63,726 bases of DNA, filler included, from Lenisia limosa (GCA_001655205.1; 9 parts of 9 records of this genome joined end to end with filler, not necessarily neighbours in it), one strand, 5' to 3'. Shown: positions 431 through 21,194, counted from the first letter of the whole stretch. Notes: a model not told the origin generated them from the sequence alone. Numbers and translations are program-made.

Positions 431-3094
431 NAATGGAAAACATATGCTAATAGTCAAAGTCGTTGTCAAGAAGAAGCCAAGCCCACATGGTAAAACAGTA
501 TTTGAAGAGGCGACGAAGCTGAGGGCCCCGGCAAAGATCGAGGGATCTACTGAGGGTGACGTGGCAGGCGGCGTTGATACTGAGTCAAGCAGGGCTGCGG
601 GGTTATGCCGGTGTGATGGGAACATATAATAGGACGTGGGGCTTACCGGGTACACCTCCGGGAGCAGAAGCATTTGGTCCGCTCGGCAGTAAACGGCTTA
701 AAAGCTACCACGTCAGCATGAGGTAAATGATAGGACAAACGCTATTGACCTCCTACCTTAGAGGCCTTGTCACCAATTGCTGCGTTGTCAACAGCAGTCA
801 ACTCCTTGATCGACTCAGGGTCTTCAATGAAGAAGTCGCAGACAAATTGTCTGTTGGCATGGGGGCGTGCGCAGAGCCAGTCAATCACGTGCAGAGATTT
901 CTATATGTGTCAATAAAATACGATCTATATAAAACATGTAGATATAGCATACCACCATGTCATATCATAAAATAATATTAGTATATCAGATATGTACTAT
1001 CAGATAGTACATATTACCTTGGCAATACTCAATAAATATTCCTGTAGCATATCACAGTTCTTTTTCAACTGCCACTCACCATGCAAGTAATAGGAGTCAT
1101 GTAGTCCAGACGTCTCTCCAGTGCTTCACACACGTATTCAGTCTCAAGTTCTTCTCCCAACTTCTTGATAAGGCCTTGAATTTCGCTGGGTTTCGGCATC
1201 GACCGTCCACCTGCAGAATAATTAGATAGGATGACACAATAGACCACAAATACCAGTTATTTCCAACCCACTTTCTTGGGTCAGTCTCAACACTGCCTGG
1301 TTCTCCAGGAGCCCCGTGCTCTTGGCAAGAGTGGACTCTCCGAAAGTCAATCCCGTCCCGAGGGCACCCGGCGCCGCCTTGGCTGGTTCCTGGTTCGTCC
1401 CCTGCGGCGCGTATCTAAATGCCATTCAGCCCAGAGAAACTCAAGCTCTCCTTCATGTCCAATCATAAGAAGAATGGCCAGAGAGCCCGGCATACCTTGG
1501 GTCAGAGACGATGGTGTCGGCGGGGTTGGTCAGCACCGGGGGCTCCATTTCAGCTGGGGTATCGTCGTCATCAGCCCATCCTCCGCCGGGTCTGCAAATG
1601 TCAAAATGCCTCCAAGGTGTCGTGGGAAACAAACCTTCCGTTGACGTGCTCTTTCTCTGTCAGGCTGGGCTGGTTCATGCCTTGCGAATAATCGCCACTA
1701 GGTGGCAGGTTGGCAGGTTGGACCGCAGTGTTACGCATCATGGCCTTCTTTCGGTCAAGCTCGAACTTGCTGGCTGCCTTCGCTAAAGAATGTCAGCGGT
1801 GTCCATAATTCAATCTTTAAAAAACAAGGTGCTTACGGGAAGCAGTCTGGAATGCAGGGTTGCCAAAGCCGCCAAATGACGACGTCGCATTTGCTGAAGA
1901 AACCCCACCTGACTTTGAATCTGTCTCAGCTGGGTGGGGGGTAAAGGGGGGAAATGAAAGTTAGTGAGAGTATGTACATAGAATGTGAAATAATTTTAAA
2001 ACAATCTGTGATATTATACTTCTCCATCATATCAAATTCGGAACTAGGAATCAAAAAATAAAATAGATAATAAAAATAATTGAGCAGCAAAAAGAATTTT
2101 AATTGGAGTAAAGATAGCAATCGCTCACTAAACACGCAAAAGCAAAGCAAATAGTATCCAAGAAGGAAACTTTAAGCATGTTATACACAAGAACTAAATT
2201 GGTACCCCATTTTACTATCCTCAGTTCCATACTTTCCTCAACACATGAGATCCCATACCTGAAAGCGAAGCAGACTGCACCGAAAGCCCTGGAGTTGGTT
2301 CGGATTTGTTGGTGATGGAACTGAAGGTCCCTCCGTCTGAACCCAAACCACCCATTCCGCCAGATTCTTCCCATTTGGTCTTTTGGTTGTTGACACTGAA
2401 AAGCATCGGTGTCAGAGCCTGTGCGAGGGTCAGACAGCACACCCAAAGAGACTCTCACCTCAGCCTCCTTCCTGACGTCAGCGTTGAAGGCGTCACCATG
2501 AACCGGATCCTGGGGTCCATGGAACACTAAAATGTCAATCTCTGTTATCTATTGTATTTTCATAAGCCTTGTGATTGTCATCCGTTCACTTGATGCTTCT
2601 TTCAGTTCTGCTGTGTGTTCGCGAAGGTCAAGATGGAATTGCATGTGTCCTTTCTGAATGAGGTGCTTCATCATTCTCAAAACCTAATTTGTCATCCATA
2701 TCTCCTCAAAGTATCAGTTAATATTGGTTTTGGGAGAAACGACCATTTATTGAAAAGATAAACGTGTGCGTTGATAAATCCATGAAACCAACCTTGACTT
2801 TGATAAGGGGAGAAGGTTTTTGCAAGCGCTTAAGGAGATACAAAAGGCAGTTACTGCATGACTCTTGTGATTTAAACGTGATTTCTACACAAAGGTTAAG
2901 AGGAAATGCTTGCAGAATGAAAAAAAATATAATAATCCGACATACTGCAAACATCATTATACACAAAACCAGCAGAGGGATTCTGGTCATCTGAAGTTGC
3001 TTTCAGGATTATCTGGTGGAATGAGAGCTAAGCCAACGTGGAGGCAAACCTGGTTATCCTTCTGATTCTCGATAATGCGCTTGGCCTTATCCAT
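431..3094 (-). CDS. TEPSIN: Tepsin (AP-4 accessory ENTH/VHS protein); 3' end lost in N gap
   Basis: Spliced translation MDKAK..IILKATSDDQNPSAGFVY..SQESCSNCLLYLLKRLQKPSPLIKVK..LRMMKHLIQKG..FHGPQDPVHGDAFNADVRKEAE matches the tepsin ENTH (KGTSDD..PGY; GPPDPLHG..KVR). A second folded domain (PKPSEIQGLIKKLGEELETEYVCEALERRL..KSLHVIDWL) follows a low-complexity linker. Confidence 0.85.
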
Positions 3095-5117: not shown

Positions 5118-8100
5118 CATCACCCAGAATAAATAAGTTTTTAACACTACCTTCTTGATCTAAGTGGTCAGTTGTGAGCAGACAGAAATGCCACCATCCA
5201 AGCAATAACAGTGAACCCAGCTCACCGTTTAGACATTGAAGACCCGGACCGGTTCTTTTTGGACACTGCTGGTTCCGGAGTATTCCGTGCAGAGTCCAGT
5301 TCAGACTGAAACATATAAGACCAATGCTGTCATATTTCGATTCCAGCTTTTTCCATTTTAATAATAAATAGCGTCCCACCCACCGCTTCAATCAAAATGT
5401 CAGGATCATGCTGGAAAATGAGATACACATATAGGACTCTTCCAAAAAGACACAAAAGAAAGCGCATACCCTGTTCTTCAGCACCATAAGAATGGCCTCC
5501 TTTTCTTCTTCAGGGATCTCAACATAACCCAACTGCGAGTATTGGCCGTCGAAATAGAAGTTCGTCAAAGCTGAAGATAAGTTCAAATCCGTTATAGCAC
5601 ACCTTTCCACTCTATATCATTCAAGATGACCCCCCCACCTTCATTCGAGTCAACTATTTTCACGAAGTCAGCCTGAGATCGGTCATCCAACAAGTTACCG
5701 CAGAGGTTTAGTACTTGCAGTGTTCGGTTTCCTGTAACGTCAACATATCATTATTACGGTAACAATCTCAAGGTAACCAGAACCGTATTATATATAGGAA
5801 GGAAACAACATAAAGTAACGTAACGAGTCATACGTACCTATTTTATACCAGAAAACAGAGAAAAAAAAAAAATCAAAGAAACAACATGATATCATACGGT
5901 GAAATTATTTTATCAGTGCAATCATAAATTTGAAAACTCGGGCAACTCACCTTGGTTATAAAAAGCACCATCAATCTCAAGAAGCCCGGTTGTAATGTAG
6001 GATGGAGAATTGCTAGGGGTTTCAGGCGTTCTAGGGGGTCAAAAAAAGACATATACAAAGTAAGAGAAAAAAAAGTGAAGTACTAGGTGTGAAATACCAC
6101 AACTTACAATGGGGGTGCCATCTCGGATATGGTAAGCTTGCTAGCATTGTGTGTCAGGACTTTAATACTACATAGTGAGGCATTGAATCCACACCACTTG
6201 CTTACTCCTTGCTCGAAGGCTTTCTCTTACGGTCTGTCGTCTTCTTGTCGGGCTTCTTGTCTGAAAGGATAAACGCAGACCATGAGACATTCAAGAAAGG
6301 AAAGCTGCACTATCAAAGAGGAGTATCAAAGGGTCCACCTTTTGTCTTGAGGCGAGAGCTGCGTTTGGCTTTTGATGCGTCGTTCTCCCGGGCTTCAGCA
6401 GTCAATTTGCGCAATCTATTTGGTCAATTTCTTGATTCACACTTGTGTTACACAATATCCACCAACTTTTGCCTTCTACGCTCCACAACTTCTGCCTTGG
6501 ATAAATGGTAGTACGACATAGCCTGTAGCGTAATAGGGTGCTTTACAGAATTGAACGCCCATTGATTGGACAAGTTGTACAATGAAACTGAGGTCAAGAC
6601 AAAATAAGAATCAAGAGTATACATGGAAGTAAAAAAAACGTAAGTAGAGTTATTTCTTCCATATACCCACCAAAGAGATATTGTGGACGGACTCGTAAGT
6701 TAAACGGTTGTGGAAGAGGGAAAGGGAGGCTGAAATGTTAGCTGGCCCCAAAAAAATAAGTCTCACTTAAAGTGGTATTGGATTTGAGGAGTAGAGCAAT
6801 AGCGTCACCCGTTTGATCCGAAAGCAGGTTGTTGTTGAAGTTTAATGACGTGACCTGAATATCACTACCATAGTCTTATTTGAATCACAAGTAACCCAAT
6901 CTTCTCACAACTGCCGCGCTCTGTTACACAAACCTGTGGGAAGATAGTTTCAAAGGTTGTGAAAAACTGCTTGCCATCTAAAAAATCAGAGGCGAGGGTT
7001 TGAAAGCAGTTTTTTAAAAAACTATGATATTTTACTTTGTAAATTCTGGTCAGCTTTTCGAATTATACATTAGGGTTTTGAGCAAACATAAAGGGGTGAA
7101 TGAAAGCGATCATGTATAAACTTTGCACTGAAGTGGGGAGTCATACCTTCATCAGAAATCATATTGCCTTGAATAGAAAGCGTGGTCATGTTCCAAGAAT
7201 CGTCCTCCTAGAAAAATGAGCAAGAGCACAACATCTCCTCTCAACACAGCACATTACCTCAGGGGCGGAGTGGAGTAACTTCGTCAAGTTTACAGGGCGG
7301 GCTGGAATATCTTCTTCCTCCTCCTCCTCTTGGTCTTCTTCCTCCTCGTCGTCATTATCACTTGCCTCTTCTGCCACTTTATTTGATTCGGTGTCACTTT
7401 TCGGGGCTTCTTCCCCTTCAACAGGCGTTGCAGGCCTTCCAAGACTTGCCTACACCATCACCAACTATCTCAACAAACCATGCTAGTAACAGGTTCCACA
7501 ATATTAGTGACAGTGACTTCGCTTGGTGCTATCAGGCCTGAAAGATGTGAAAAAGCACAAAACATAACAAACTTTCTTGCCTCCTTGCCTCCTCATCTCT
7601 ATCACCGTTCGTGCGGATTGTGATCTAAAAAAAAAAAAGATAAAAGAAGGGTATGAGAAGGAAGCTTACCCAGTCTAATGACAGGGTCCGGAAAGGAATC
7701 TCCGAAATGAGCATCAGAAACTCATCGAAATGGATCTGGCTTGGAAACTCCACGTTATGGAGCCTAAAAAGTAAAGAGAACGCAAACTGTTATAAAGGTT
7801 ACAGGACACCGAAAGAAGAGGAAAAATTATCAAACAAGAAGGCTGCCCATTTACGTTACAGCAGAGATTCCGGCCGCGTCACCAAGACACAAAGACAGAC
7901 ACTTGAGGGTTCCCCTGTCTAGACTGTAGTTCCGAATCACTAGTTCAGAAATGTGCTGCATAGTCAGAAAAAAGGAAACCAGATTGGATTGCGGGGATGA
8001 ACATACAATTCAGCCGATATCCCAGAACCTCCTACCGGGGCATCGGGAACAACAAAAGGCCGAAGTGTGTTTTCAACAAGAGTTGCACTTTTCTTCATTT

Positions 8101-8707
8101 TACCACTTTTGGAGTGTTTGGCTGCAACAATAAACAATTGCGCTGTTGTCTTCAAAAAAAAAATCAATTCTGAGCAATAGAGCCCCAAAACCGCTGATAG
8201 TAGTTGCAGTAGATGCCCATTACAAAACCAACCTCTTGACGTGAGCGGGGCTTCCTTCTTTTCCTCGACAATGGGAGGGGGCGNNNNNNNNNNNNNNNNN
8301 NNNNNNNNNNNNNNNNNNNNNNNNNNNNNNNNNNNNNNNNNNNNNNNNNNNNNNNNNNNNNNNNNNNNNNNNNNNNNNNNNNNNNNNNNNNNNNNNNNNN
8401 NNNNNNNNGCAGCATAATCCATCAACAAATTTCCAGTGTTGTTGTATGGGTCTGACGATGTTAACAAATAATGACACTGTAGATAGGGGGGCGAATGTGA
8501 ACCTACTCTGAGAAGACACCCAATTCCTACCAAAACTCTCAGGCTTAGACTTCTCAAAGAGAGCTTCATTATCTGCCACTAAATAAAGTAAGGAAGAAAA
8601 GAGAAGTGGGTAGTACCATTCCAAATGTTCGGTTCTGGAGTTGGTTGGAAGAGGTCTTCGGGAGTCTGTGGAGGGTCAACCACCTCCACAAGCGGAACTT
8701 TTGGCAT
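5118..8707 (-). CDS. LRRC71: Leucine-rich repeat protein, LRRC71-like
   Basis: TGNLLMDYA, VIRNYSLDRGTLKCLSLCL, LNFNNNLLSDQTGDAIALLLKSNTTL, YHLSKAEVVERRRQKL and NRTLQVLNLCGNLLDD resemble, from memory, LRRC71 segments (..THTEVVERRRLL). 3' boundary approximate. Confidence 0.62.
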
Positions 8708-8962
8708 ATTTATAATAGATATGTGGTTGTTGTTGTTTTGATAAGTGGGAGAGGGGCGAAAAGCGAAAAAAACTGATAAAAAGGTAATCAAAGTCAGGGG
8801 GTTTATATACCTTTACCTTTGTTTCTGGAAAAGCCTCTCCTGAGCCTCTTTTCCCTTTATTTAAAGAAGGAAGTATTTGAAGAAGAAAGATCTAACTATT
8901 TTATGGATTGAGTTGATCGTTGTACGTGTCGCCCATCTGTTCAAACCATTTGTAACGCAACA

Positions 8963-10926
8963 ATGTTAGCTCGAACGATATGCCAGTTTATTTGTTTGCT
9001 TCTTTTGGTAAACTTCTCCATTGCAAAGGTTTGAGCCCTCAAATGTCAAATGTCCACCCTAAATTTATATTTTCTTCCAATCTGTAGCTCATCTCAATTT
9101 CCATTCTAGGTTTATACAGGAGCTGATCTTCAAGCCAAAAATGGCTGGAAGTTCTTTGAACAGTATCAAAAGGTAACAAAATCAATTTTAATGAATAAAA
9201 AATGTGTTTTTTTATGAGAATATGAAGCAACAAAAATTATTAGAAAAAAGTTGGAGAATTGGCTGTGACAGTGTAGATTGGCATTCTTGCTAACCCCACT
9301 GCTACGGTCCAGCCCGAAATGACACACGTTGTGGATTCAATGGTTTCAAGAAATGTTGATTTGGTGGCGGTATTTGCTCCAGAACACGGCTTCAGGGGTG
9401 ATTTACAGGTTTGTTTGTCAAGGATTTACATCTAGGATGGACTTGGTGATGATAAACCTTATGTTGACCAAAAGACGGGGGTCAAGGTCTTCCCCACGTA
9501 CGGAATCAAGTTAGACAAAATAAAGGAAGTAGGGCGTGCTATACCATGTCTAACTTCTAGCGTGTCATTGAATCGAATATCAGGGCGTTTGTTTTCGATA
9601 TTCAGGACGCTGGTGTGAGGTTTTACACCTTCATATGGTCTCTCTACCAAATGATGGAAGTCTGTGATGATCTTAATATTCCTGTTGGGGGGGGGGGGGA
9701 TAAGNNNNNNNNNNNNNNNNNNNNNNNNNNNNNNNNNNNNNNNNNNNNNNNNNNNNNNNNNNNNNNNNNNNNNNNNNNNNNNNNNNNNNNNNNNNNNNNN
9801 NNNNNNNNNNNNNCCAATCTGTTTCCGGCCCAGTTATCACTAATCACCCGTCGTTTGTCGGCCTTAAGTCCATTGCCATTGTATGCACTTGGTGGCCCAG
9901 TTCAGAGTGTCACTTCGTTGCCTAAACTAAATATTGCTGTCAATTTACCATTTACGGTGTAGCAACATGGTATGACTGTTGGGGAGTTGGCTCAATTCTT
10001 CAACTCACAATTCCTTGGAGATCGCTTGAACGTTTGTTCATTTTCTGGGTTTAACGGCACAGGTTGAAGTAATCAAAATGTCTGGCTGGAACAGAGGGAT
10101 GACCTTTAGTGAGACTGGTCTCAACTGGGTGCCCACCTCTCCAAACAGTAAGTCTTTTTTATTATTTTGACATTAACACGTAGTTCCGACCCCCGAGGTG
10201 TGCCAAATATATGCCGGCACAGGCTTCATTGAGGCCACACTGGTTTCCGAGGGCCGTGGAACAACTCTTCCGTTCAAGACTTTTGGGTGGGTCTTTACTA
10301 CTTGCTCGCTCTTATGTCTTTCTCAAAGCTAACAGTACAGGGCCCCCCAATACTACAATAATTCGTTTGTGGATACACTTTCTCAGTACTTGAAAGACAT
10401 TGAACATGTGACTGGAAAAGTATGCTCAGTATGTTGGTTAACAGTTCAGATCACTCTCAGGGAAGACTACTTTATTCCCGTGTTTTCCAAACATATTGGC
10501 AAGTTGTGTAGAGGTGTCGAGGCTTACGTTGATGGTAGTCTGTAAGAGGGAAATGAAATTTGTCAGGTAGTTGGAATATTAAAAACTATTGTTTTTCTCT
10601 TACTTATATGATATGCACATCTGCTTTTTTTGTTTATTACATGCAAGAGATGACATGACCACATTTGGTGTTGCCGTTCTCTCTGCCCTGAGGAAACACT
10701 GGCCGGAAAATGAGCAGTTTTGGAGAAGCGACAATTGGATTGGATACCTCAGTGGTTGGTTGGGTTTGGAATGACAACGCTTCAAAGCGGCCGAAATAAC
10801 AGTGTAGGCGTGGACTATATCCAACCAATGGTAGAGAACGGGTCACACCCACTCGATATCCGCGCACAATGGACGGAGGAATTGCTCAAGTTCAAGGCTG
10901 TCAGAACAAAGTTTCTCCTTTATTAA
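8963..10926 (+). CDS. namZ: DUF1343 / GH171 exo-beta-N-acetylmuramidase (NamZ) homologue with signal peptide, about 10 introns
   Basis: [22 protein letters not shown]|[128 protein letters not shown]. These are the DUF1343 hallmark motifs, split by GT-AG introns. Confidence 0.92.
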
Positions 10927-11006
10927 TTTAATTTATTCTGATTTGACACATTGGTTATGAAACAGTTCATTTTAAATAATCTGACCTAGACATTACAATT
11001 ACATAT

Positions 11007-13108
11007 TTAGACTTTCTCCTTACTTTCCTCCTCACTTTCCTTTTNNNNNNNNNNNNNNNNNNNNNNNNNNNNNNNNNNNNNNNNNNNNNNNNNNAATAAA
11101 TGGGAACGTATGGAGGAACTTCCCATAAAATATCTCGAAATATGTGTTTATTTTTGAAACCAAGCGAATAAAAAAGCCAAGTGTGAGGGGAGCTCAAAAA
11201 CAAACCTGTGTACGACTTATTTTGTTGTCAGGGACCTTTAATCTCTCGGAAACATCAGCCTTCATAATTTTCATCTCACGCACCACGCGCTAATCAGTCA
11301 AGGAAAGTAAAACTCTCCCCAGTAAATTCAGTAATGGAGACCGAATTTGAATGGCACTGTTCTCACCTCAAATTCCTGACAGTCGAAAGAGAGAACTGAA
11401 GCCTTCCTTTTGAGCTGTTGAGCCTGGATAATTTCTTCTGTCAGCGGCTGGCCGTTGTATTCTGAAGATGTGAGCAGATCAAACGTGGAAACACATGTTG
11501 GTTGAGCTCGATAGCAATATGACGAATGAACTCTGAAGATGTAGCGATGTGAATTGAAAGCAGGTTGTATCTGAACCCCGTATACCCCAGACTGGCTCCT
11601 CATGCTCCTGTGAATCATTGATACCTACAATTCCATCCTGAAAGAGTGAGCACAACAATGTACTAATTAAGATATCGACTTACTGCATCCCATTATTCTT
11701 CTTGTGGAATGGAGAGAGTAGGAACAAACCTTCACTGAAAAAGAGAGTCTGTAGAGGTTTTCAATAGTCTCACCAAAGTTGTTAGGATTAATCTGAAAAA
11801 TAAAGAAAAAAAATAGAAGAAGCAAAAAAAACAAAAAAAAAAACAATGTCACAATGCCACACGTTGTGGTCCTCCTACCATATTACGGAAGAATCCTTTT
11901 CTTTTATCTCTGAGCACCTTGCGAACTGCCTGAAGGCTGCCAGAATTTATGTCCTCATGTTCCTCTTTTTTCTATTCGATCAGACCCAACTAAGTTTTAA
12001 AAGAAGGAATAGCAAGTTGCACAATGAAAAAGCTGAATTTCTTCCCCTCAGCTTTCCCATGTAGTGGACAAATACCTACCGCTGAGGGTTTTGTAGCCTC
12101 GCCGATTTTGCTCTTCAGGCGAGCCTTTGACACTTTCCTAACTCGCGGGCCAAGCGAAAGCGAACCAACACTGGGGTATAATGATTGATTTATATCATAA
12201 GATAACTGAAATAGTAAAGAATATGGATGAGTTTAGTCACATTTGGCATACCATATATAGCAATGAGAAATAAAAAATAAGGCCGAAGCCTCCACACCAT
12301 CACGCTTATAAGAGATATTGGATTATAGTATAATATAATTCATTTGCCTTACAACTCTTTGCACACAGCTTTCTGCATACCTCCCAAGCATATAGGTACT
12401 TGAACTACTGGCATAATGATTAAACCCACATTGTATCACAGACGGGGGGTCTCCTGAACATTGGGTAAATATGGTCAGCAAATTTGGCGTAGCCTTGGGC
12501 AATATGGGGTCCCTATAACGGTCAAAACAAATTCCCAACGCCGCCGCGACTTACCGTCAGTCGAACACAAGCATCATCACACAAGTTGGAGTTGAAGTAG
12601 TCTTTCTCAAAGTTTGCGACAAAGTCCTCTGTGATTGTTACTGAGTCCAAAGTTTGGTGAGCGAACCGAAATTCAGCGTCTTCGTGCTTGTTTTGATGTT
12701 GTCAGCCTTGTCGGAAGCAATCGAGGCGGCAGTTGTCAGGAAGTTGGCATGATTCTCATACTCACGGAAATTGGCGTTGGATTTCACTGTAGTGTCATGT
12801 CCACCCTCAGCTCTCTTTCCTTTTGAAAAAAAAAAACCTATCCCATTTGAGACAACACCACATACATTTTCTAAAGTCTTTTGAAGATTTGGCGATAATC
12901 TCAATGAGCTCCGTATTCCTAGGGTTTGCCATTTCGGTCTTATTCTCTATAATATCAATAAAAACAACATTTCTCGAAACTAACCCAAGATGGATCGCGT
13001 AGCATCAAGACTTTTTTGGCGGAAAATGGCACGTTGGTTGAACTGCTGGAACTCCGCACGCCGGCTCTCAATGATGTCCTTTTGTTCTTTTTCAGGATCT
13101 TTTGCCAT
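11007..13108 (-). CDS. NSE4: SMC5/6 kleisin subunit NSE4
   Basis: FFRNMINPNNFGETIENLYRLSFSVKDG matches Nse4_C (V.nP.sF.qTvEN.FylSF.vrdG). Also EYENHANFLTTAASIASDKA and SVGSLSLGPRVRK. Confidence 0.8.
12254..12392 (-). repeat. Repeat family B, in NSE4 intron
   Basis: Reverse complement of the family B consensus. Confidence 0.9.
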
Positions 13109-14429: not shown

Positions 14430-16990
14430 TCAATCAGCGTAGTCTTTAATGAGCTTGAAGACAACAAAAAAGGCAGCGATGAAGTGAAGCAGTATTACAA
14501 GAATTAATATTTCAGTCTGAACGGTGAAACGATGTCATATCTTTACCTTCAATGGAGCATGACAGGCTATTTCTTTCTGAATTGGTTGCCTCAATAACTC
14601 ATCACAGTACCACTCACATCTAAGAGTCATAAAATGTAGTCATCACTTATCGATAATTGCGAGAAAACAAAAAGTCCTCATACACAGGCTCATGTCCGGT
14701 TGTCCAACTCTCCTGTCCTGTTGGCATGAGCTGAACCGGAACCGGGGCGACCCGAATATGTTCGGTGTGCTCAAGGCCCTTTCGAACATCCTGAGTTGAG
14801 ACACGACCTTGGATTCCCGGTTTGCCATGGGCGACTATCAAGTCAGTTGCGTTCCATTTATGGCTTTTATGAGACTGAATCACAATATCATATAATAATA
14901 ATAATATACTAATATATCATACGATATCAGATACTATATTGCAATGAGAAAAAAAATAAAATAAGGTTGTTATGGCCATACATATCATATGATACGCATA
15001 TTCCACCAAATTTGAGACTGATTATTGTGTTTACAAACCTGGGGTATTCCTGTTTTTGAACTGTCGAGTTTTCAGGTGAGCGTATTGAAGTCGTTGAGAG
15101 AGGTACGAAACCTGCTATCCTTAATACAGATCAAACTGGCTGCAAGTCATAAACATAGCCATTATGAACCTATTTAACCACCACCCCACACCCCAACGCA
15201 ATATATACCTCGTCAGGGTTATTGTCCTCCCAATCAAGCCATTTATTCCGCATGTCTTGATCGATACTTCGCTGCTCAACTTCTTCTCTGCTCCATTCAT
15301 CCTGTTTAATAGTAAATCTAAGCTGAAAAATCTTGTCCAAACGGAAATGCCTAAATAAAATTGGATACGACTATCTCACTTACTGAGCCATCACAACAGT
15401 CACAAATGCCATCATTGACCCTAGAGGTTGGGATTGCCACGTCACTGGCGCGACAGTGAAACTAATGGGGATAATTTCAACAAAGGTTGAACGTTGATAA
15501 GTATGACAGAGTATTCTAAACTGTTGGTGACCTAAGCAACAAGGTAAAATATAGCACGATTCTAAAAGTGTAGAGAAGAGGGTGTTGCAAAGCATGAATA
15601 AAAAAAACGAAATGTTGAACAAGTTGCAATGTGATTCTTTTAAAACTATTGACTTCGTAGAGACACCAGTACCCCATCCTTTGTATTATTCCCTTCAATC
15701 ATCATTCCCCGTAATAAAAGAGCATCCCAATCCACCTCCTTATCAACACACGCTGAAGTACCAGGCTCATCGATACCTATTTAGGTTAGAACTGCAACCG
15801 TTCATCTGGGTTAGTCGTTTGCACAAAAGAGAACCCAATTACATAGTAAGCTTGAATTAAAGATACAGGAAACTTAATAGCGCAATCCACATCTATGATC
15901 CTCCAACCACTGAGGGGACAGTCACAATAGTCATCGTTGAGGGCTGAGATAGGCAATACTTTACCATCGCATTCAAATTCGTTTTCTTGAACTATGCAGT
16001 AAGCAGAAGAAAAATGTCATCATAGCTGTCAATAATCACAATATCCATTGTAAGCATAATAAAGTTAAATGCTTCAGCAAGATACAACCTATTCCCTTAT
16101 TTTAAACTGATGAAATACATAAGGAGGATGGAAGGGCAAGTTCTAACAGGAGAGCAAAAGGAACCTCATGACGTACATCAAACCGATAATATTAGTCTAA
16201 GTAAGAGAAGTAATTCAAACACCACATACTGAATCCAAGATAAGCATCCCATTTGCTGGATGGCACACCATGAAGACAATGAAGGCAAGGTGCCGTTGGG
16301 AGGTGATATAAGCTGCATAATGAAATGGAGAATAGCCCAGGAAAATGTTGTAATATGATAAATTAAAGCAACACTATAAAACCAATCAATCACCCACTGC
16401 GAAAGAAAAGGTCTGGCGTTGTGATCTGCGTCTTGCATAACAGACTTCGGCAGACACGTGAAATGAGTGATCAACCATGACACACCAAACAAGGAAAATG
16501 TGAAAAGGAAGAGCAACACAATCATTCCGAACCATGACAGTAAGCTCCACTTAATAAGTGTTGTAAACGACGAGAATATGAACTGAATGACCGACACACA
16601 GCCATCAATGGGCCCGGATCGCGCTTTCCAAACTGTCCTTAAGGGTGAGCTGAAGCTGAACAATTCCTCAAAAAAAGCACAATCAGTAACATTTCCAACT
16701 CACATTATCTTTCTTAAAGTCCTCATTATAATAAAGTCCAGTGAGACTGGGTTTGAACACATGAGACCGTCACTCATTATTGCTGTGAAGTGATAAGCCT
16801 CCTGTGATAAGTTGACAGTTTTATAGAGTGTTCGCTATCCTCCTCCTTGTCTTTTATTTTCTTTCCTTTTTCTTTATTTGGTTACTATTTGATTACTGTT
16901 TTCTTATTTTCAATTGAAAGAGGATAGAAGAGGCAAAAAAGGCATAAAAGATAGTAAAATCCATGAATTGATTTGCTTTTATGCTAGGTT
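14430..16990 (-). CDS. Protein with glucosidase II beta (PRKCSH-like) Cys-rich domain, probably membrane-anchored
   Basis: FECDGKVLPISALNDDYCDC..GIDEPGTSAC..FHCRASDVAIPTSRVNDGICDCCDGS|DEW is the PRKCSH-like signature. A downstream exon FLVILLHFIAAFFVVFKLIKDYAD* is TM-like. Both gene ends uncertain. Confidence 0.62.
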
Positions 16991-17106: not shown

Positions 17107-18890
17107 ATGGGAGGAGTGGAAGGGGTGAAAGGAGTCTGCAACAGGTGTTGCGCTCAGAAGACCTACCACTGTAACGCCTTTTTAAATGCATCAGTCATTG
17201 GGCATGAAGAGTATAAGGGAGGATATATGCTATGAAGGGGAACTTTTGACTCAAGACCGGTGACATTTCAGATGCCTTGCTGCTCTGATGAACAATGGCT
17301 GGAGCTTAGTCTCGGAATCGATCCTGGTGGGTTCGGAAATCTTGAAGATAATATGAAAGTTTTCATTAAGGTCAGATTTGGGACAGATACGGTATTAAGT
17401 AATATATTCTTTTTTTTTTTTGATTTGATACCTAGTCACTTACCTGGCAGGATGATCCGCCGCTGCATGCAGCAACTATCCATGGTAGTGTAGACGCAAT
17501 GAGAACGTTAGTCAAACTAGGAGCAGATGTTGATGCTATTGATATGGATGTAAGATGGTTGTAGGCTAATTTGTTGGAAGATAACCATGTTACTCTGGTG
17601 TGTATACTGCATCTTATCGTTCTCAGAGCTGCAGATGAAATAAGGGGAATTTTATTGGGCGTTGTCAGAGCTACAGATGAAATAATGGGAATTTTATTGG
17701 GCTTTCTTATTTTTCAATTTCAAAAACATGGTCACAGTCATGTTACAGGCTCGCCTGTATGATATTATGTTACATTTGTTCCCCAGGGTGAAACCGCTCT
17801 CCATCATGCAATCATTGCGGGTGACTTGGCGAAAGTGAAGCTCCTCATTGAAGAGGGCTGTGATATCGATAAAGGCTCTGAGGTTGGTATTACTACTGCC
17901 AACTTAACCACCTAGTTTTCAAATCCTCTGATTGATTCCTATTCTTGTGAAGACATTTTCGAGACTCTAATTAAGCACGATGTAAATATCAACAGGTTTA
18001 GACAGGTATAACTCGTTACATGAACTGCTGTTCATGTTTCAGTGTATCACCCCTCTTCATGTGGCAGCCTCGAAAGGCTATACCAGGCCAGTGACGCGAC
18101 TTTTGGAGGAGGGTGCAGCTGTTGATGCCCAGAACTTGAGGGTTTGCACACTGTTTGATAAAATAAATAATTTGTGGTATTATTCCGAACTCCTGAAGAG
18201 GAGGATTTCGACAGTTTGCCGGTTTTCAAATTTCATTTGTTAAATAATGTCATAATTTTGAAAATTGACACTTCACTTTTCAGCTGAGAAAGATATAATG
18301 ATATTTTCAGAAAAACTTATAAAATGATTTGAAAATTGACAATGTTTAATAGAAGCATGTTTTGATTTTGATCCAATTAGGAAGAAACGCCTCTCCACCT
18401 TGCTTGTGTGAATAAACAACACAAAGTTGTGGAGATCTTATTGAAGCACGGTTCCGACACCACAATAAAAGACAAACATGTAGGGGAAAACAAATCTTAT
18501 TTTAAAGGGCTCTACTGCTGTGACTCTAGCTTGGGGAGGAATGGACATTACAAGTTGTGATCTTTTGCTGGCAAATGGGGCTGACCCCGGAAACCTGACA
18601 GAAATGTTTCTTCAAAAAGTGGGTGGTGAAGTTGCTGATACATATATCATATATAGCTATATATGATATATGATATCTGTTTTTCTTTTTATTTAAAAGG
18701 GATACCTTGAGCGCTTCAGTACGAACCGACAACTACCAGATGCAGTATTACAATTAATTGTGAGTTCCCAAGAATCGCATGCTCAACGCTTAAATGATTG
18801 TCACTCTTTTTAGAACAGTCAATTCGGTACACCAGGTTACCGATTAATCCCTTTTACAGCAGTTTTATTAGATTATTACCCAAGACCTGA
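17107..18890 (+). CDS. Ankyrin repeat protein
   Basis: DPPLHAATIHGSVDAMRTLVKLGADVD; GETALHHAIIAGDLAKVKLLIEEGCDID; ITPLHVAASKGYTRPVTRLLEEGAAVD; ETPLHLACVNKQHKVVEILLKHGSD. Confidence 0.87.
17624..17704. repeat. 42-bp tandem duplication in an ankyrin-gene intron
   Basis: CAGAGCT(G/A)CAGATGAAATAA(G/T)GGGAATTTTATTGGGC twice. Confidence 0.9.
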
Positions 18891-18973: not shown

Positions 18974-21194
18974 TTATTCAGCCTTGTCCTCCTTGTCGTC
19001 CTTGTCCTGAGCGAAACTCATGCCGTCACGGGCGGGTCTGCGCTGTCTGCGGCCGCCCACACGGCGTGGCCCATCCTCGGGGATGACAACCTAGGGTCAC
19101 GTTAATGGGAGGTTATAATCACAAAAACGTATCCAACATCGTCTCAAGACACTAGGGGAATAAAGAGTATGATTGACAAACCTCTCCGGTCTCGGTGGGC
19201 GGAGGAAGGGAAGTGTGGGGGTCAGTGGGAGGGAAAGAGGTCACGTCAACAAGTCCACACTTCAAGGCCTTGACCGAAGATGCGTGGCAAGGGTGCTGCA
19301 AGGCGATCAACGTAGGGCTTCTGCAAGGACTGTTTGCAAACAAAAATGTCCCCATATTTCTCAACAAATTTACTGGTTCTTCTGCACTGTACCCATCATA
19401 AGTACAAACCTCGTATTCGACGATATGACTGTCAATATCCCATCCGCGCTCGAGAAGATAATCGGCAGCAAGAGCGCCAACGTAGGCATCCAATGCTACG
19501 GAAGTGAATAACAATTATGAATCTCAAAGTACTAACGTAGAGAAACAGCAAACACGCAAATGCAAAATAAAATTTCAAATAAAAAGTGCAAAACATGTCC
19601 TTCATACCAGCGTAGTACCTCATGCCCATTGAGAGAGGTCTAGAGTTCCAGTTAGCCAGCTGATAGCCCTTGGAGATCTTCACGCCAAAGAGACAGTTGG
19701 ACTGGAAGTAAGAAACAGTCACAACTGCGACCGAATACCACAGTGTTTGCTTACGATATCACTGAGGCCAAGGTTGTTGTTGTTGCCTTCTTGGAGAGTT
19801 TCAATGGGAACTGCCGATGGTCCTTCTCCGTCCTCTTCTTTACTGAAGGGTGAAATGAGCACTTTTTCTCATTTAATCCGGACAATGGGAACAGCAACAT
19901 TTTTCAAAGACTCACGCCACCAACATGATAACAGGTCGGCGGCTGGCACGGGGGAAAATGTCGGTGGGAACGCTGGCCAAATCGACAAGACGGAAGTTGG
20001 GAAGGTCGATTTCCTAAGACTGTCAAGTCCAATCTGGTAACGATATCCAAAGACAGAACAGCCGATCACAACCACTTGGAACATATTATATCAATGTTTT
20101 ATCATGTTCTCAGCAAACTTTCATGTCCTCAGTGTTTGTAGAAACTCCGCATTTGGGGATACAATGGCAGGTGGCAGCCTGAGCAGGTAAAACATACATC
20201 CATGAGAGATGAAAGTAGAGGTGGAATGCTATTATGACCTTTTAGAAGTGAGTACCCCCCCCCCCACTGTGCAGAGATCTTCAACCTTTTGTCCCTCGCC
20301 AAGGAAAGAGCGGTTCAGGATGATGTCGTTAGTGAGACGCGCAATATCGTACTTGACGCCGAGGCCAACAAAGGCCACGCCGTTGTCATGCAGCTCAACA
20401 AGGGCCTCGAGAACATCCTGAAAAATAACGCCGGCAGATCAACATCCTGAAAGATAAAGCCCGCAGATAAACCAGCTGGAATTCCGTACAAAAATGCCGA
20501 TACACAAATATTAGCCTCCCTTACAGCAGGCTTGAGGATGAGAAGATCCCAGACACAGGCGTAGAGGGGAGAGGAGAACTGGGCTGTTGAGACGCAGTTC
20601 AGCTGACCTAAGGCAATCAGTCAAAGCAGGCCGAGGAAAGCAGAAGCAAACGGCATTTGCCAGGATATTTTCCCCACCAGGAATAGTTTCCATGAGCCAT
20701 TCCACATCAAGACCGAGGAATTGCGGACATAAGTCAAGAAGACGCTGGAAGTGTCAGGATTTCACTCAATCCTCAAATATTCATTTGTCCGCCTTTCATC
20801 AACAAACCTCAACGGATTGCTTGAGGGCCTCAGGGGTAGAGATAAGCTCAAGATCTTCGTTCTCGAGAGGAAGTGTGAAGAAAGGTTCGCAGTCCAAACG
20901 GTCACCTGGCCGTTAAATAGGCATGCGAACAACAATAAAGCGAGGGACATGTAGATGCGACCAAAGAAAAATGAGAAAGGCCCATCACACCGTGACGGAA
21001 GTTAACACCCTTGACAATGATGTTGATGTCCTTGCCCTTTGACTAATCGGGTCAATGGTAGAGGAAGAGAGGTGTGTTGGTCGGAGGTACAGAAAATCTG
21101 GTCTGGTAAAGGAAGGGGGAAGAGAGAATCCAGGCCTACAAGAGAACCGTCCTCGTTCTGAACCAAGAGGCCCTTCATAGACTCGTGCTCAGCC
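18974..21194 (-). CDS. DEDDy 3'-5' exonuclease, WRN-exo/EXD2-like; 5' truncated at spacer
   Basis: ExoI FLGLDVEW, ExoII region LVELHDNGVAFVGLGVKYDIARL, ExoIII QLANWNSRPLSMGMR.Y.ALDAY. Ends ..DKEDKAE*. Confidence 0.82.

What the first reader, a model, noticed from the sequence alone, without database searches (positions are those of the whole stretch)
8963..10926. Intron-containing, signal-peptide-bearing eukaryotic homologue of bacterial NamZ
Seen: full-length DUF1343 with [34 protein letters not shown] and SEGRGTT motifs, about 10 spliceosomal introns and a hydrophobic leader, lying between two eukaryotic genes in one assembly piece, so contamination is unlikely. Established: DUF1343/GH171 enzymes (B. 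subtilis NamZ/YbbC) release MurNAc from the non-reducing end of peptidoglycan fragments and are characterised from bacteria. Inference: a horizontally acquired, domesticated phagolysosomal enzyme for complete digestion of prey cell walls, possibly part of an undescribed eukaryotic MurNAc salvage route.
Basis: partly seen in the sequence, partly recalled or inferred. Interest (0 to 1): 0.78.

Follow-up and report, generated by a model that had tools for sequence, protein, structure and literature searches.

The report
Spliced eukaryotic NamZ muramidase gene
This is a real, intron-rich, expressed nuclear gene of an unidentified eukaryote that encodes a bacterial-type cell-wall sugar-trimming enzyme (NamZ). 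Similar genes already exist in choanoflagellates, diplonemids, chrysophytes and ciliates, so it is a new member of a known kind, not a first.

Summary
At 8963-10926 (+) lies a 13-exon, 12-intron gene. Its 410-residue product matches Pfam NamZ_N plus NamZ_C from end to end.

- **Catalytic residues:** it keeps the proposed catalytic Glu (PEHG) and Arg (EGRG).
- **Leader:** it starts with a hydrophobic leader.
- **Assembly gap:** the gap is harmless. A poly(A) RNA contig bridges it with 31 letters that restore 11 in-frame codons, including the family's LDRPNP motif.
- **Splicing:** the same RNA contig removes 11 of the 12 predicted GT-AG introns. It retains only a 27-nt intron that carries an in-frame TAG.
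- **Contamination:** this is excluded. The upstream gene has RNA-supported 29-nt and 168-nt introns, and one DNA contig at the same depth spans both genes.

The gene does have bacterial ancestry, and its nearest bacterial relatives are Actinobacteria-type NamZ at 42-44% identity. But it falls inside a well-supported group of eukaryotic NamZ proteins with leader peptides. That group includes Salpingoeca rosetta 'YbbC', S. kvevrii, a diplonemid and a chrysophyte.

Horizontally acquired NamZ, and a NamZ/MurQ/AnmK route, have already been reported in ciliates. A lysosomal or phagosomal exo-muramidase role is plausible but untested. The host organism could not be identified.

The parts
8870..8962 (+). 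5' untranslated region; the poly(A) RNA contig starts at 8870. It contains a 2-codon upstream ORF at 8903-8911.
   Evidence: record 8 begins at 8870
8963..9028 (+). Exon 1: start codon and hydrophobic leader (22 residues, likely signal peptide).
   Evidence: joint 9028>9110 in RNA
9110..9172 (+). Exon 2: start of the region homologous to mature bacterial NamZ.
9277..9408 (+). Exon 3: NamZ_N profile positions 1-44. Holds PEHGFRG (9379-9399); the Glu codon 9382-9384 corresponds to Glu92 of B. subtilis NamZ.
9409..9435 (+). Intron 3: 27 nt, GT..AG, with an in-frame TAG. It is the only predicted intron NOT removed in the RNA contig.
   Evidence: (9275-9528 colinear with record 221-474)
9436..9528 (+). 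Exon 4.
   Evidence: joint 9528>9561
9561..9683 (+). Exon 5: [11 protein letters not shown] motif (9597-9629).
9684..9813 (+). Inferred intron of about 80 nt (starting GTTGGG) plus the first 35 nt of exon 6, mostly hidden in the N gap 9705-9813. The RNA supplies 31 letters that encode VILDRPNPLGG in frame.
   Evidence: tables 5, 5c, 8; the intron itself is inferred from 94 DNA letters against 31 RNA letters
9814..9880 (+). Exon 6, visible part.
9963..10031 (+). Exon 7: HGMTVGELA motif.
10063..10147 (+). Exon 8: WVPTSPN motif, end of NamZ_N.
10184..10286 (+). Exon 9: start of NamZ_C. SEGRGTT (10246-10266), whose Arg corresponds to Arg279 of B. subtilis NamZ.
10341..10419 (+). Exon 10.
10450..10541 (+). 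Exon 11 (NamZ_C profile positions 50-75). The 30-nt intron before it is removed in the RNA.
   Evidence: table 4: 30 letters left out at 10420
10648..10754 (+). Exon 12.
10808..10926 (+). Exon 13 with stop TAA (10924-10926). The protein ends in ..FLLY, like bacterial NamZ.
6949..8738 (-). Seen part of the upstream neighbour, a spliced gene on the opposite strand. Its introns at 7449-7477 (29 nt) and 6979-7146 (168 nt) are removed in a poly(A) RNA contig. Its 5' end lies about 130 nt from the NamZ transcript start (head to head).

Best explanation
This is a genuine nuclear gene of a eukaryote with very short introns. It encodes a secretory-pathway member of glycoside hydrolase family GH171 (NamZ, exo-beta-N-acetylmuramidase). 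Shown here: the gene structure, its transcription and splicing, its linkage to eukaryotic genes, the full NamZ_N plus NamZ_C architecture, retention of the proposed catalytic Glu and the active-site Arg, and a position in the tree among other eukaryotic NamZ proteins next to Actinobacteria-type bacterial NamZ. Inferred: the N-terminal leader sends the protein into the endomembrane system (lysosome, phagosome or outside the cell). There it removes MurNAc from the non-reducing end of peptide-free peptidoglycan glycan strands, working after lysozyme, a muramoyl-alanine amidase and a beta-N-acetylglucosaminidase, as NamZ does with NagZ and AmiE in Bacillus subtilis. That would let the cell break bacterial wall sugar chains down to single sugars. 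The gene most likely descends from an old bacterium-to-eukaryote transfer that is shared, or was passed on, among several eukaryotic lineages, not from a recent private acquisition.
For: Pfam hits of single exons are colinear along NamZ_N and NamZ_C. The product is 35-44% identical over its full length to bacterial NamZ. Glu79 and Arg269 align with Glu92 and Arg279 of B. subtilis NamZ. The window protein keeps 75 of 84 family-conserved columns, within the range of other divergent members. A poly(A) RNA contig removes 11 of 12 introns exactly at the predicted GT-AG sites and closes the gap in frame. One DNA contig covers both the neighbour gene and NamZ, at depth 32.8 against 38 for the adjacent contigs. 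Exon GC is 45% and GC3 is 49%, against a window GC of 42%, so there is no high-GC donor signature. Two trees place the protein in a starred eukaryote-only group (96/97 and 98/96) nested in bacterial diversity. An AU test disfavours grouping it with the Actinobacteria instead (p=0.036). The other eukaryotic members also begin with hydrophobic leaders. The enzymology comes from PMC8054146.
Against: No activity, localisation or signal-peptide predictor could be run. The RNA contig keeps the 27-nt intron with its in-frame TAG, so a productive mRNA is inferred, not seen. The window protein sits on a very long branch (2.0 changes per column), so its pull towards other long eukaryotic branches may be partly artefactual. 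Signature columns are mixed: 4 are shared with eukaryotes and 5 with bacteria. No intron position is shared with the S. rosetta gene. NamZ paralogues of Tannerella forsythia differ in substrate specificity (bioRxiv 10.1101/2021.12.02.470905), so the exact substrate is open. The host's feeding mode is unknown.
Confidence: 0.7

Rival explanations
1. A private, lineage-specific transfer from an Actinobacteria-like bacterium into this organism, independent of the other eukaryotic NamZ genes. Its grouping with them would be long-branch attraction.
For: The highest full-length BLAST scores are to Actinobacteria-type NamZ (42-44% identity, about 300 bits). Eukaryotic ones reach 37-41% and at most 286 bits. 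The terminal branch is 2.0. Five signature columns are shared with bacteria only. No intron position is shared with S. rosetta. Chlorokybus shows that separate entries into eukaryotes, or contaminants, occur.
Against: The bipartition that puts it with 13-14 eukaryotic rows is starred under a site-heterogeneous model in two data sets. The AU test gives p=0.036 against window plus Actinobacteria. It is 51% identical over 245 residues to a choanoflagellate-like sequence, P0400.
Confidence: 0.2
2. The gene is transcribed but no longer productive. The 27-nt segment at 9409-9435 is not spliced, its TAG ends translation after 96 residues, and the locus is decaying.
For: The only RNA contig available keeps these 27 nt. 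The branch-site-like sequence is TTTAC, not the TAAC seen in six other introns, five of them among the shorter ones (30-54 nt). The branch is long.
Against: Apart from that TAG, the 410 codons have no stop or frameshift. The catalytic residues and 89% of conserved columns are kept. Removing exactly these 27 nt restores a gap-free alignment with homologues. The segment has GT..AG ends. Contigs drop minority isoforms, so a spliced form is not excluded (tool note).
Confidence: 0.08
3. It is an active secreted GH171 enzyme, but it acts on something other than prey peptidoglycan, for example fragments from symbionts or the host's microbiota used for sensing or defence, or another hexosaminide.
For: Substrate specificities differ within the family (bioRxiv 10.1101/2021.12.02.470905). 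In Paramecium bursaria, NAMZ is discussed in the control of algal endosymbionts (bioRxiv 10.1101/2024.09.14.613017). The host's lifestyle is unknown.
Against: The only biochemically defined activities in the family are on MurNAc-containing substrates (PMC8054146). The active-site Glu and Arg are kept.
Confidence: 0.15
4. Bacterial contamination or an assembly chimera.
For: The family is overwhelmingly bacterial.
Against: There are twelve GT-AG introns, 11 of them removed in poly(A) RNA. The composition is eukaryote-like. A DNA contig from a second assembler joins it to a spliced neighbour gene at equal depth.
Confidence: 0.01

Closest known systems
Bacillus subtilis NamZ (YbbC), founding member of CAZy GH171 (PMC8054146)
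   Same: Same two-domain architecture (NamZ_N plus NamZ_C), similar length (410 against 414 residues), and an N-terminal secretion leader. The Glu of PEHG and the Arg of EGRG are conserved. It is about 40% identical to the close relative from B. glycinifermentans.
   Different: The window gene is nuclear with 12 spliceosomal introns. It is not in an operon with nagZ, amiE or murQ. Its activity is untested.
Salpingoeca rosetta 'YbbC' (NCBI, scaffold GL832957.1) and S. kvevrii NamZ (EukProt EP00050)
   Same: Eukaryotic, intron-bearing NamZ with a leader peptide. They fall in the same starred eukaryotic group in the tree. S. kvevrii is 40.5% identical from residue 1 to 410.
   Different: The 3 introns of S. 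rosetta lie at other positions. The S. rosetta protein is longer (509 residues). The window protein is far more diverged (branch 2.0 against 0.5-1.0).
Paramecium bursaria NAMZ and NamZ of anaerobic ciliates (bioRxiv 10.1101/2024.09.14.613017; PMC13198582)
   Same: These are reported as bacterium-derived NamZ genes integrated into eukaryotic genomes, with introns and expression. The proposed roles are in digesting bacterial or symbiont walls and, with MurQ and AnmK, in amino-sugar catabolism.
   Different: The ciliate genes carry UAA/UAG glutamine codons; the window gene uses the standard code throughout.
Actinobacteria-type NamZ (e.g. Saccharopolyspora, Streptoalloteichus, Actinoallomurus)
   Same: They are the nearest bacterial relatives by score (42-44% identity) and the sister group of the eukaryotic group in both trees.
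   Different: They are bacterial, intron-less and from high-GC genomes. The AU test disfavours placing the window protein among them.

Membership tests
GH171 / NamZ (Pfam PF07075 NamZ_N + PF20732 NamZ_C) | Both Pfam domains present, in order, over the full length | tested here: met
   Exons hit NamZ_N profile positions 1-198 and NamZ_C 2-75 colinearly. Four exons exceed the gathering score on their own. Full-length alignments to bacterial NamZ cover query residues 22-410.
GH171 / NamZ | Proposed catalytic glutamate at the end of beta-strand 2 (Glu92 of B. subtilis NamZ, PEHG motif) | tested here: met
   Glu79, codon 9382-9384. The mapping goes through B. glycinifermentans NamZ with an offset of 5.
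GH171 / NamZ | Conserved arginine of the C-terminal domain pointing into the cleft (Arg279, EGRG motif) | tested here: met
   Arg269 in SEGRGTT, 10246-10266.
GH171 / NamZ | Exo-beta-N-acetylmuramidase activity on pNP-MurNAc, MurNAc-GlcNAc or peptide-free glycan strands | not testable with these tools
   Needs the recombinant enzyme.
GH171 / NamZ | Secreted (cleavable signal peptide, as in B. subtilis NamZ) | tested here: inconclusive
   The 22-residue leader has one basic residue, a 12-residue hydrophobic core and Ser-Ile-Ala before Lys22. Homology to the mature enzyme starts at residue 23. No signal-peptide predictor was available.
Bacterium-derived gene integrated in a eukaryotic genome | Spliceosomal introns removed in poly(A) RNA | tested here: met
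   11 of 12 introns are removed exactly at GT..AG sites; one 27-nt intron is retained.
Bacterium-derived gene integrated in a eukaryotic genome | Physical linkage to native eukaryotic genes | tested here: met
   A 6,006-nt DNA contig from a second assembler spans the spliced upstream gene and NamZ, at a depth equal to its neighbours. The run may be the assembly's own source.
Bacterium-derived gene integrated in a eukaryotic genome | Eukaryotic sequences nested within bacterial diversity in a tree | tested here: met
   The eukaryotic group (96/97 and 98/96) lies inside a 100/99 clade with Actinobacteria and Firmicutes. Outgroups were Bacteroidota, Planctomycetota and Acidobacteriota.
Single eukaryotic NamZ clade (shared ancestry after transfer) | Shared intron positions or unambiguous shared signature residues | tested here: not met
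   No intron position is shared with S. rosetta. Signature columns are 4 eukaryote-like against 5 bacteria-like. Only the tree and the AU test (p=0.036) favour it.

The most novel reading that the evidence does not exclude
The host may be a fast-evolving, highly reduced animal parasite. The hints are introns of 27-36 nt with weak splice-site consensus, contigs of the DNA run that total about 71 Mb, a highly repeated element beside the gene, neighbour ORF pieces that mostly lack Pfam matches, and a terminal branch on this protein twice as long as any other. Among animals, such short introns are reported only in dicyemids and myxobolid myxozoans, with somewhat longer ones in orthonectids (PMC13644364, PMC6543705). 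If so, this would be the first NamZ in an animal. It could be a holdover from the ancestor shared with choanoflagellates, which do have it, or a separate gain. It would give a gutless parasite a way to degrade or sense bacterial wall sugars.
Probability: 0.2. Interest if true: 0.65.

Novelty: new member of a known kind. Interest (0 to 1): 0.38.

Why it matters
No eukaryotic NamZ has been characterised biochemically. Animal-type lysosomal hexosaminidases are not known to remove MurNAc. A secreted or lysosomal GH171 enzyme would therefore fill the missing step that lets a eukaryote depolymerise peptidoglycan glycan strands completely. This locus adds a well-documented genomic example (introns, RNA support, linkage) to a patchy eukaryotic group that now includes choanoflagellates, a diplonemid, a chrysophyte and ciliates. 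It offers a clean candidate for expression and assay. The idea itself, a bacterium-derived NamZ used by eukaryotes with a possible MurNAc catabolic route, is already in the literature for ciliates. The gain is therefore incremental unless the host proves to be an animal.

Tried and rejected
- **Bacterial contamination:** rejected on splicing, linkage, depth and composition.
- **Ciliate-type genetic code, making the 27-nt segment coding:** rejected. All other codons use the standard code with CAA/CAG for Gln and no in-frame TAA/TAG. Removing the 27 nt gives a gap-free alignment.
- **Profile searches with the exons aligned to bacterial rows (A3):** these returned only Firmicutes. An alignment with one bacterial row (A4) was misaligned by MAFFT and was dropped.
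- **Exhaustive search with exon 3 alone:** it found no sequence identical or close to the window's own protein. The gene is therefore not in that protein collection.
- **Identifying the organism:** all attempts failed. Rfam and tRNA scans were empty. Pfam on 20 neighbour ORF pieces gave only ankyrin repeats and a weak PRKCSH-like hit. Four exact-protein look-ups of window ORFs were blank. The high-copy repeat was absent from JGI metagenomes. A Dicyema guess is weakened because this gene's median intron is about 53 nt, against 27 nt in dicyemids (PMC6543705).
- **Structure prediction:** not attempted, because the spliced protein cannot be handed over by reference.

Full report

I built a gene model from GT..AG boundaries. 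Its exons are: 8963-9028, 9110-9172, 9277-9408, 9436-9528, 9561-9683, an exon that begins inside the N gap and ends at 9880, 9963-10031, 10063-10147, 10184-10286, 10341-10419, 10450-10541, 10648-10754 and 10808-10926 (stop TAA).

Single exons hit Pfam NamZ_N at profile positions 1-44, 78-114, 149-165 and 171-198. They hit NamZ_C at 2-27 and 50-75. The hits are in order, and four exons exceed the gathering score on their own. Exon 5 also matches the DUF1343 crystal-structure proteins 4JJA and 4K05. There is only one such locus in the piece.

**The assembly gap.** I compared the two halves of the protein with 68 bacterial NamZ ORFs taken from 80 fetched loci. That comparison predicted about 11-12 missing residues.

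A public poly(A) RNA run and a DNA run were then laid on 7100-13000. The results were:
- The RNA contig (1,328 nt, starting at 8870) carries 31 letters between 9687 and 9814. These keep the frame and encode VILDRPNPLGG, the LDRPNP motif that every family member has at that place.
- The DNA contig has 94 real letters where the assembly shows 109 N.
- The difference, 115 DNA letters against 35 RNA letters between 9683 and 9814, implies one more intron of about 80 nt starting GTTGGG. This is an inference, because the 94 letters were not shown.

With those 11 codons the product has 410 residues. I assembled it only inside scripts.

**Transcription and splicing.** The RNA contig has joints at exactly the predicted borders for these introns:

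| Intron | Length (nt) |
|---|---|
| 1 | 81 |
| 2 | 104 |
| 4 | 32 |
| 5 (in the gap) | about 80 |
| 6 | 82 |
| 7 | 31 |
| 8 | 36 |
| 9 | 54 |
| 10 | 30 |
| 11 | 106 |
| 12 | 53 |

All of them have GT..AG ends.

There is one exception. The 27-nt intron 3 (9409-9435) is retained in the contig, and it contains an in-frame TAG. I still read it as an intron, for three reasons:
- It has GT..AG ends.
- Removing it gives an alignment without any indel against all homologues.
- Introns of 30-36 nt in the same gene are removed.

Its branch-site-like sequence is TTTAC. Six other introns (30, 31, 32, 36, 53 and 54 nt) have TAAC 8-10 nt from the acceptor. Inefficient splicing is therefore plausible. Because the run is held only as contigs, the spliced fraction is unknown.

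**Not contamination.**
- The upstream neighbour lies on the minus strand. A second poly(A) RNA contig (1,825 nt) removes its 29-nt intron (7449-7477, CT..AC on the plus strand) and its 168-nt intron (6979-7146).
- That neighbour's 5' end (8738) is about 130 nt from the NamZ transcript start (8870), so the two genes are head to head.
- A 6,006-nt DNA contig made by a different assembler runs through the neighbour, both N gaps and NamZ. Its depth is 32.8, against 38 for the adjacent contigs. The run may be the assembly's own source, so this shows consistency, not independence.
- Exon GC is 45%, GC3 is 49% and intron GC is 36%, against 42% for the window. Nothing recalls a high-GC donor.
- Further along the piece lie ankyrin-repeat exons (17986-18557) and a weak PRKCSH-like exon (15789-16016).

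**What the protein is.**
- It is 35-44% identical over its whole length to bacterial NamZ.
- The JBC paper on B. subtilis NamZ names Glu92, at the tip of strand 2, and Arg279 as the likely active-site residues. It also reports a cleavable signal peptide (PMC8054146).
- I mapped these through the close relative from B. glycinifermentans. They correspond to the Glu of PEHG and the Arg of EGRG, which are Glu79 and Arg269 in the window protein.
- Of 84 alignment columns that are at least 90% conserved in 44 other family members, the window protein keeps 75. Other divergent members keep 88-91%.
- The first 22 residues form a typical leader: one Arg, a hydrophobic core, then Ser-Ile-Ala. Homology with the mature bacterial enzyme begins at residue 23.

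**Relatives.** An exhaustive search with exon 3 found no near-identical protein. The gene itself is therefore not in that collection. The search did bring in eukaryote-derived sequences. Two further word-index searches were run, one with a profile of these sequences plus the window's exons and one with the S. kvevrii protein. They gave:

| Protein | Source |
|---|---|
| P0482 | Salpingoeca rosetta 'YbbC' (NCBI) |
| P0283 | S. kvevrii |
| P0153 | the diplonemid Artemidia motanka |
| P0302 | Ochromonadaceae sp. CCMP2298 |
| P0333 | an MMETSP transcript |
| P0342 | Chlorokybus atmophyticus |
| P0201, P0225, P0398, P0400 | mRNA-sized Logan contigs |

Most of these proteins begin with hydrophobic leaders. 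P0201 sits on a contig that ends in a poly(A) tail. The S. rosetta gene lies on a 2.36 Mb scaffold between other genes and has three introns.

**Trees.** I ran IQ-TREE with LG+C20+F+G4 (PMSF).
- **59-row tree, with Bacteroidota, Planctomycetota, Acidobacteriota and other outgroups:** the window protein falls in a starred group of 10 eukaryotic rows plus itself (96/97). This group lies inside a 98/96 clade with Actinobacteria, which in turn lies inside a 100/99 clade.
- **45-row tree, with more choanoflagellate-like rows:** a 98/96 branch separates 13 eukaryotic rows, one unnamed row and the window protein from all bacteria plus Chlorokybus.
- **AU test:** forcing the window protein together with the Actinobacteria costs 7.4 log-likelihood units (AU p=0.036).

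Several cautions apply:
- The window branch is very long (2.0).
- Its place within the eukaryotic group is unresolved.
- Signature columns are mixed, 4 with eukaryotes and 5 with bacteria.
- None of its intron positions coincides with those of S. rosetta.

Bacterial ancestry is therefore well supported. Membership of a wider eukaryotic NamZ group is the better-supported reading. An independent transfer from a related donor is not excluded.

**How it most likely works (inference).** The protein would enter the secretory pathway by its leader and act in a lysosome or phagosome, or outside the cell. It would be an exo-muramidase that removes terminal MurNAc from glycan strands whose peptides and terminal GlcNAc have already been removed. 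In B. subtilis, NamZ works this way with AmiE and NagZ (PMC8054146). I rate the family assignment at about 0.95. I rate the peptidoglycan exo-muramidase role at about 0.55-0.6.

**Prior knowledge.**
- Jenkins et al. (bioRxiv 10.1101/2024.09.14.613017) report an intron-bearing, expressed, bacterium-derived NAMZ in Paramecium bursaria. They link its expression to a glycan-sensing network.
- A 2026 paper on anaerobic ciliates lists NamZ, murQ, anmK and nagB-PIGL as lateral acquisitions. [quoted passage not shown]
- 'YbbC [Salpingoeca rosetta]' is an annotated NCBI protein on that species' genome assembly.
- I found no biochemical study of any eukaryotic NamZ.

**Host organism.** It was not identified. 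Introns of 27-36 nt, weak splice-site consensus, about 71 Mb of DNA-run contigs, a highly repeated element beside the gene, neighbour ORF pieces that mostly lack Pfam matches, and the long branch all fit a fast-evolving lineage. Among animals, such short introns are reported only in dicyemids and myxobolid myxozoans. Orthonectids have a median of 57 nt (PMC13644364, PMC6543705, PMC6736024). This gene's median of about 53 nt fits the orthonectid figure better than the dicyemid one. Many protists are equally possible.

**Verdict.** The finding is a new member of a known kind, of moderate interest.

Noticed in passing
window 12291-12336: A 46-nt segment (with variable flanks containing GGCCGAAGCC) has a summed contig depth of about 47,600 in the DNA run, against about 35 for its surroundings. 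Many contigs break or join there. It looks like a very high-copy dispersed repeat. An exact 31-nt core was not found in JGI metagenomes.
   Followed up: partly
window 6949-8738 (- strand): The upstream gene is head to head with NamZ, with about 130 nt between the transcript starts. It has RNA-supported introns of 29 and 168 nt, a probable start at 8707 (MPKVPLVEVV..) and a long acidic stretch (7189-7449). Pfam gave no significant hits.
   Followed up: partly
window 8284-8408 and 9705-9813: The N-gap lengths are over-estimates. The DNA contig has 59 letters in the first gap (125 N) and 94 in the second (109 N). A run of 11 G just before the second gap is also present in the DNA contig.
   Followed up: yes
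window 9409-9435: A 27-nt GT..AG intron is retained in the poly(A) RNA contig, while introns of 30-36 nt in the same gene are removed. This may mark the lower size limit of efficient splicing in this organism.
   Followed up: partly
window 8903-8911: A two-codon upstream ORF (ATG GAT TGA) lies in the 5' UTR of the NamZ transcript.
   Followed up: no
window 10951: An RNA contig that begins at 10951 is preceded by Illumina adapter letters plus a short run of T. This suggests the poly(A) end of a minus-strand transcript only about 25 nt from the NamZ stop codon, i.e. convergent genes with almost no spacer.
   Followed up: no
window 17986-18663 (+) and 15789-16016 (-): There are ankyrin-repeat exons (Pfam Ank, E=6e-8) and a weak glucosidase II beta subunit-like (PRKCSH) exon. 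A 173-codon open frame rich in hydrophobic residues at 16181-16699 (-) has no family match.
   Followed up: partly
window 500-2500 and 19000-21194: Two segments with higher GC (47-50% against about 39%) carry long overlapping open frames on both strands and gave no Pfam hits. They may be repeat or transposon remnants.
   Followed up: partly
P0342 (Chlorokybus atmophyticus, EukProt): This green-algal NamZ does not join the eukaryotic group. In the 59-row tree it sits among Actinobacteria and metagenome rows; in the 45-row tree it lies on the bacterial side of the starred branch, unresolved. It is either a separate transfer or a contaminant in that gene set.
   Followed up: partly
L083 4001-6093 (Salpingoeca rosetta GL832957.1): The annotated 'YbbC' gene has three introns (218, 132 and 213 nt), after residue 55 (phase 1), 83 and 126. 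The first lies only 5 nt from the position of the window gene's intron 2, a near miss and not a shared position.
   Followed up: yes
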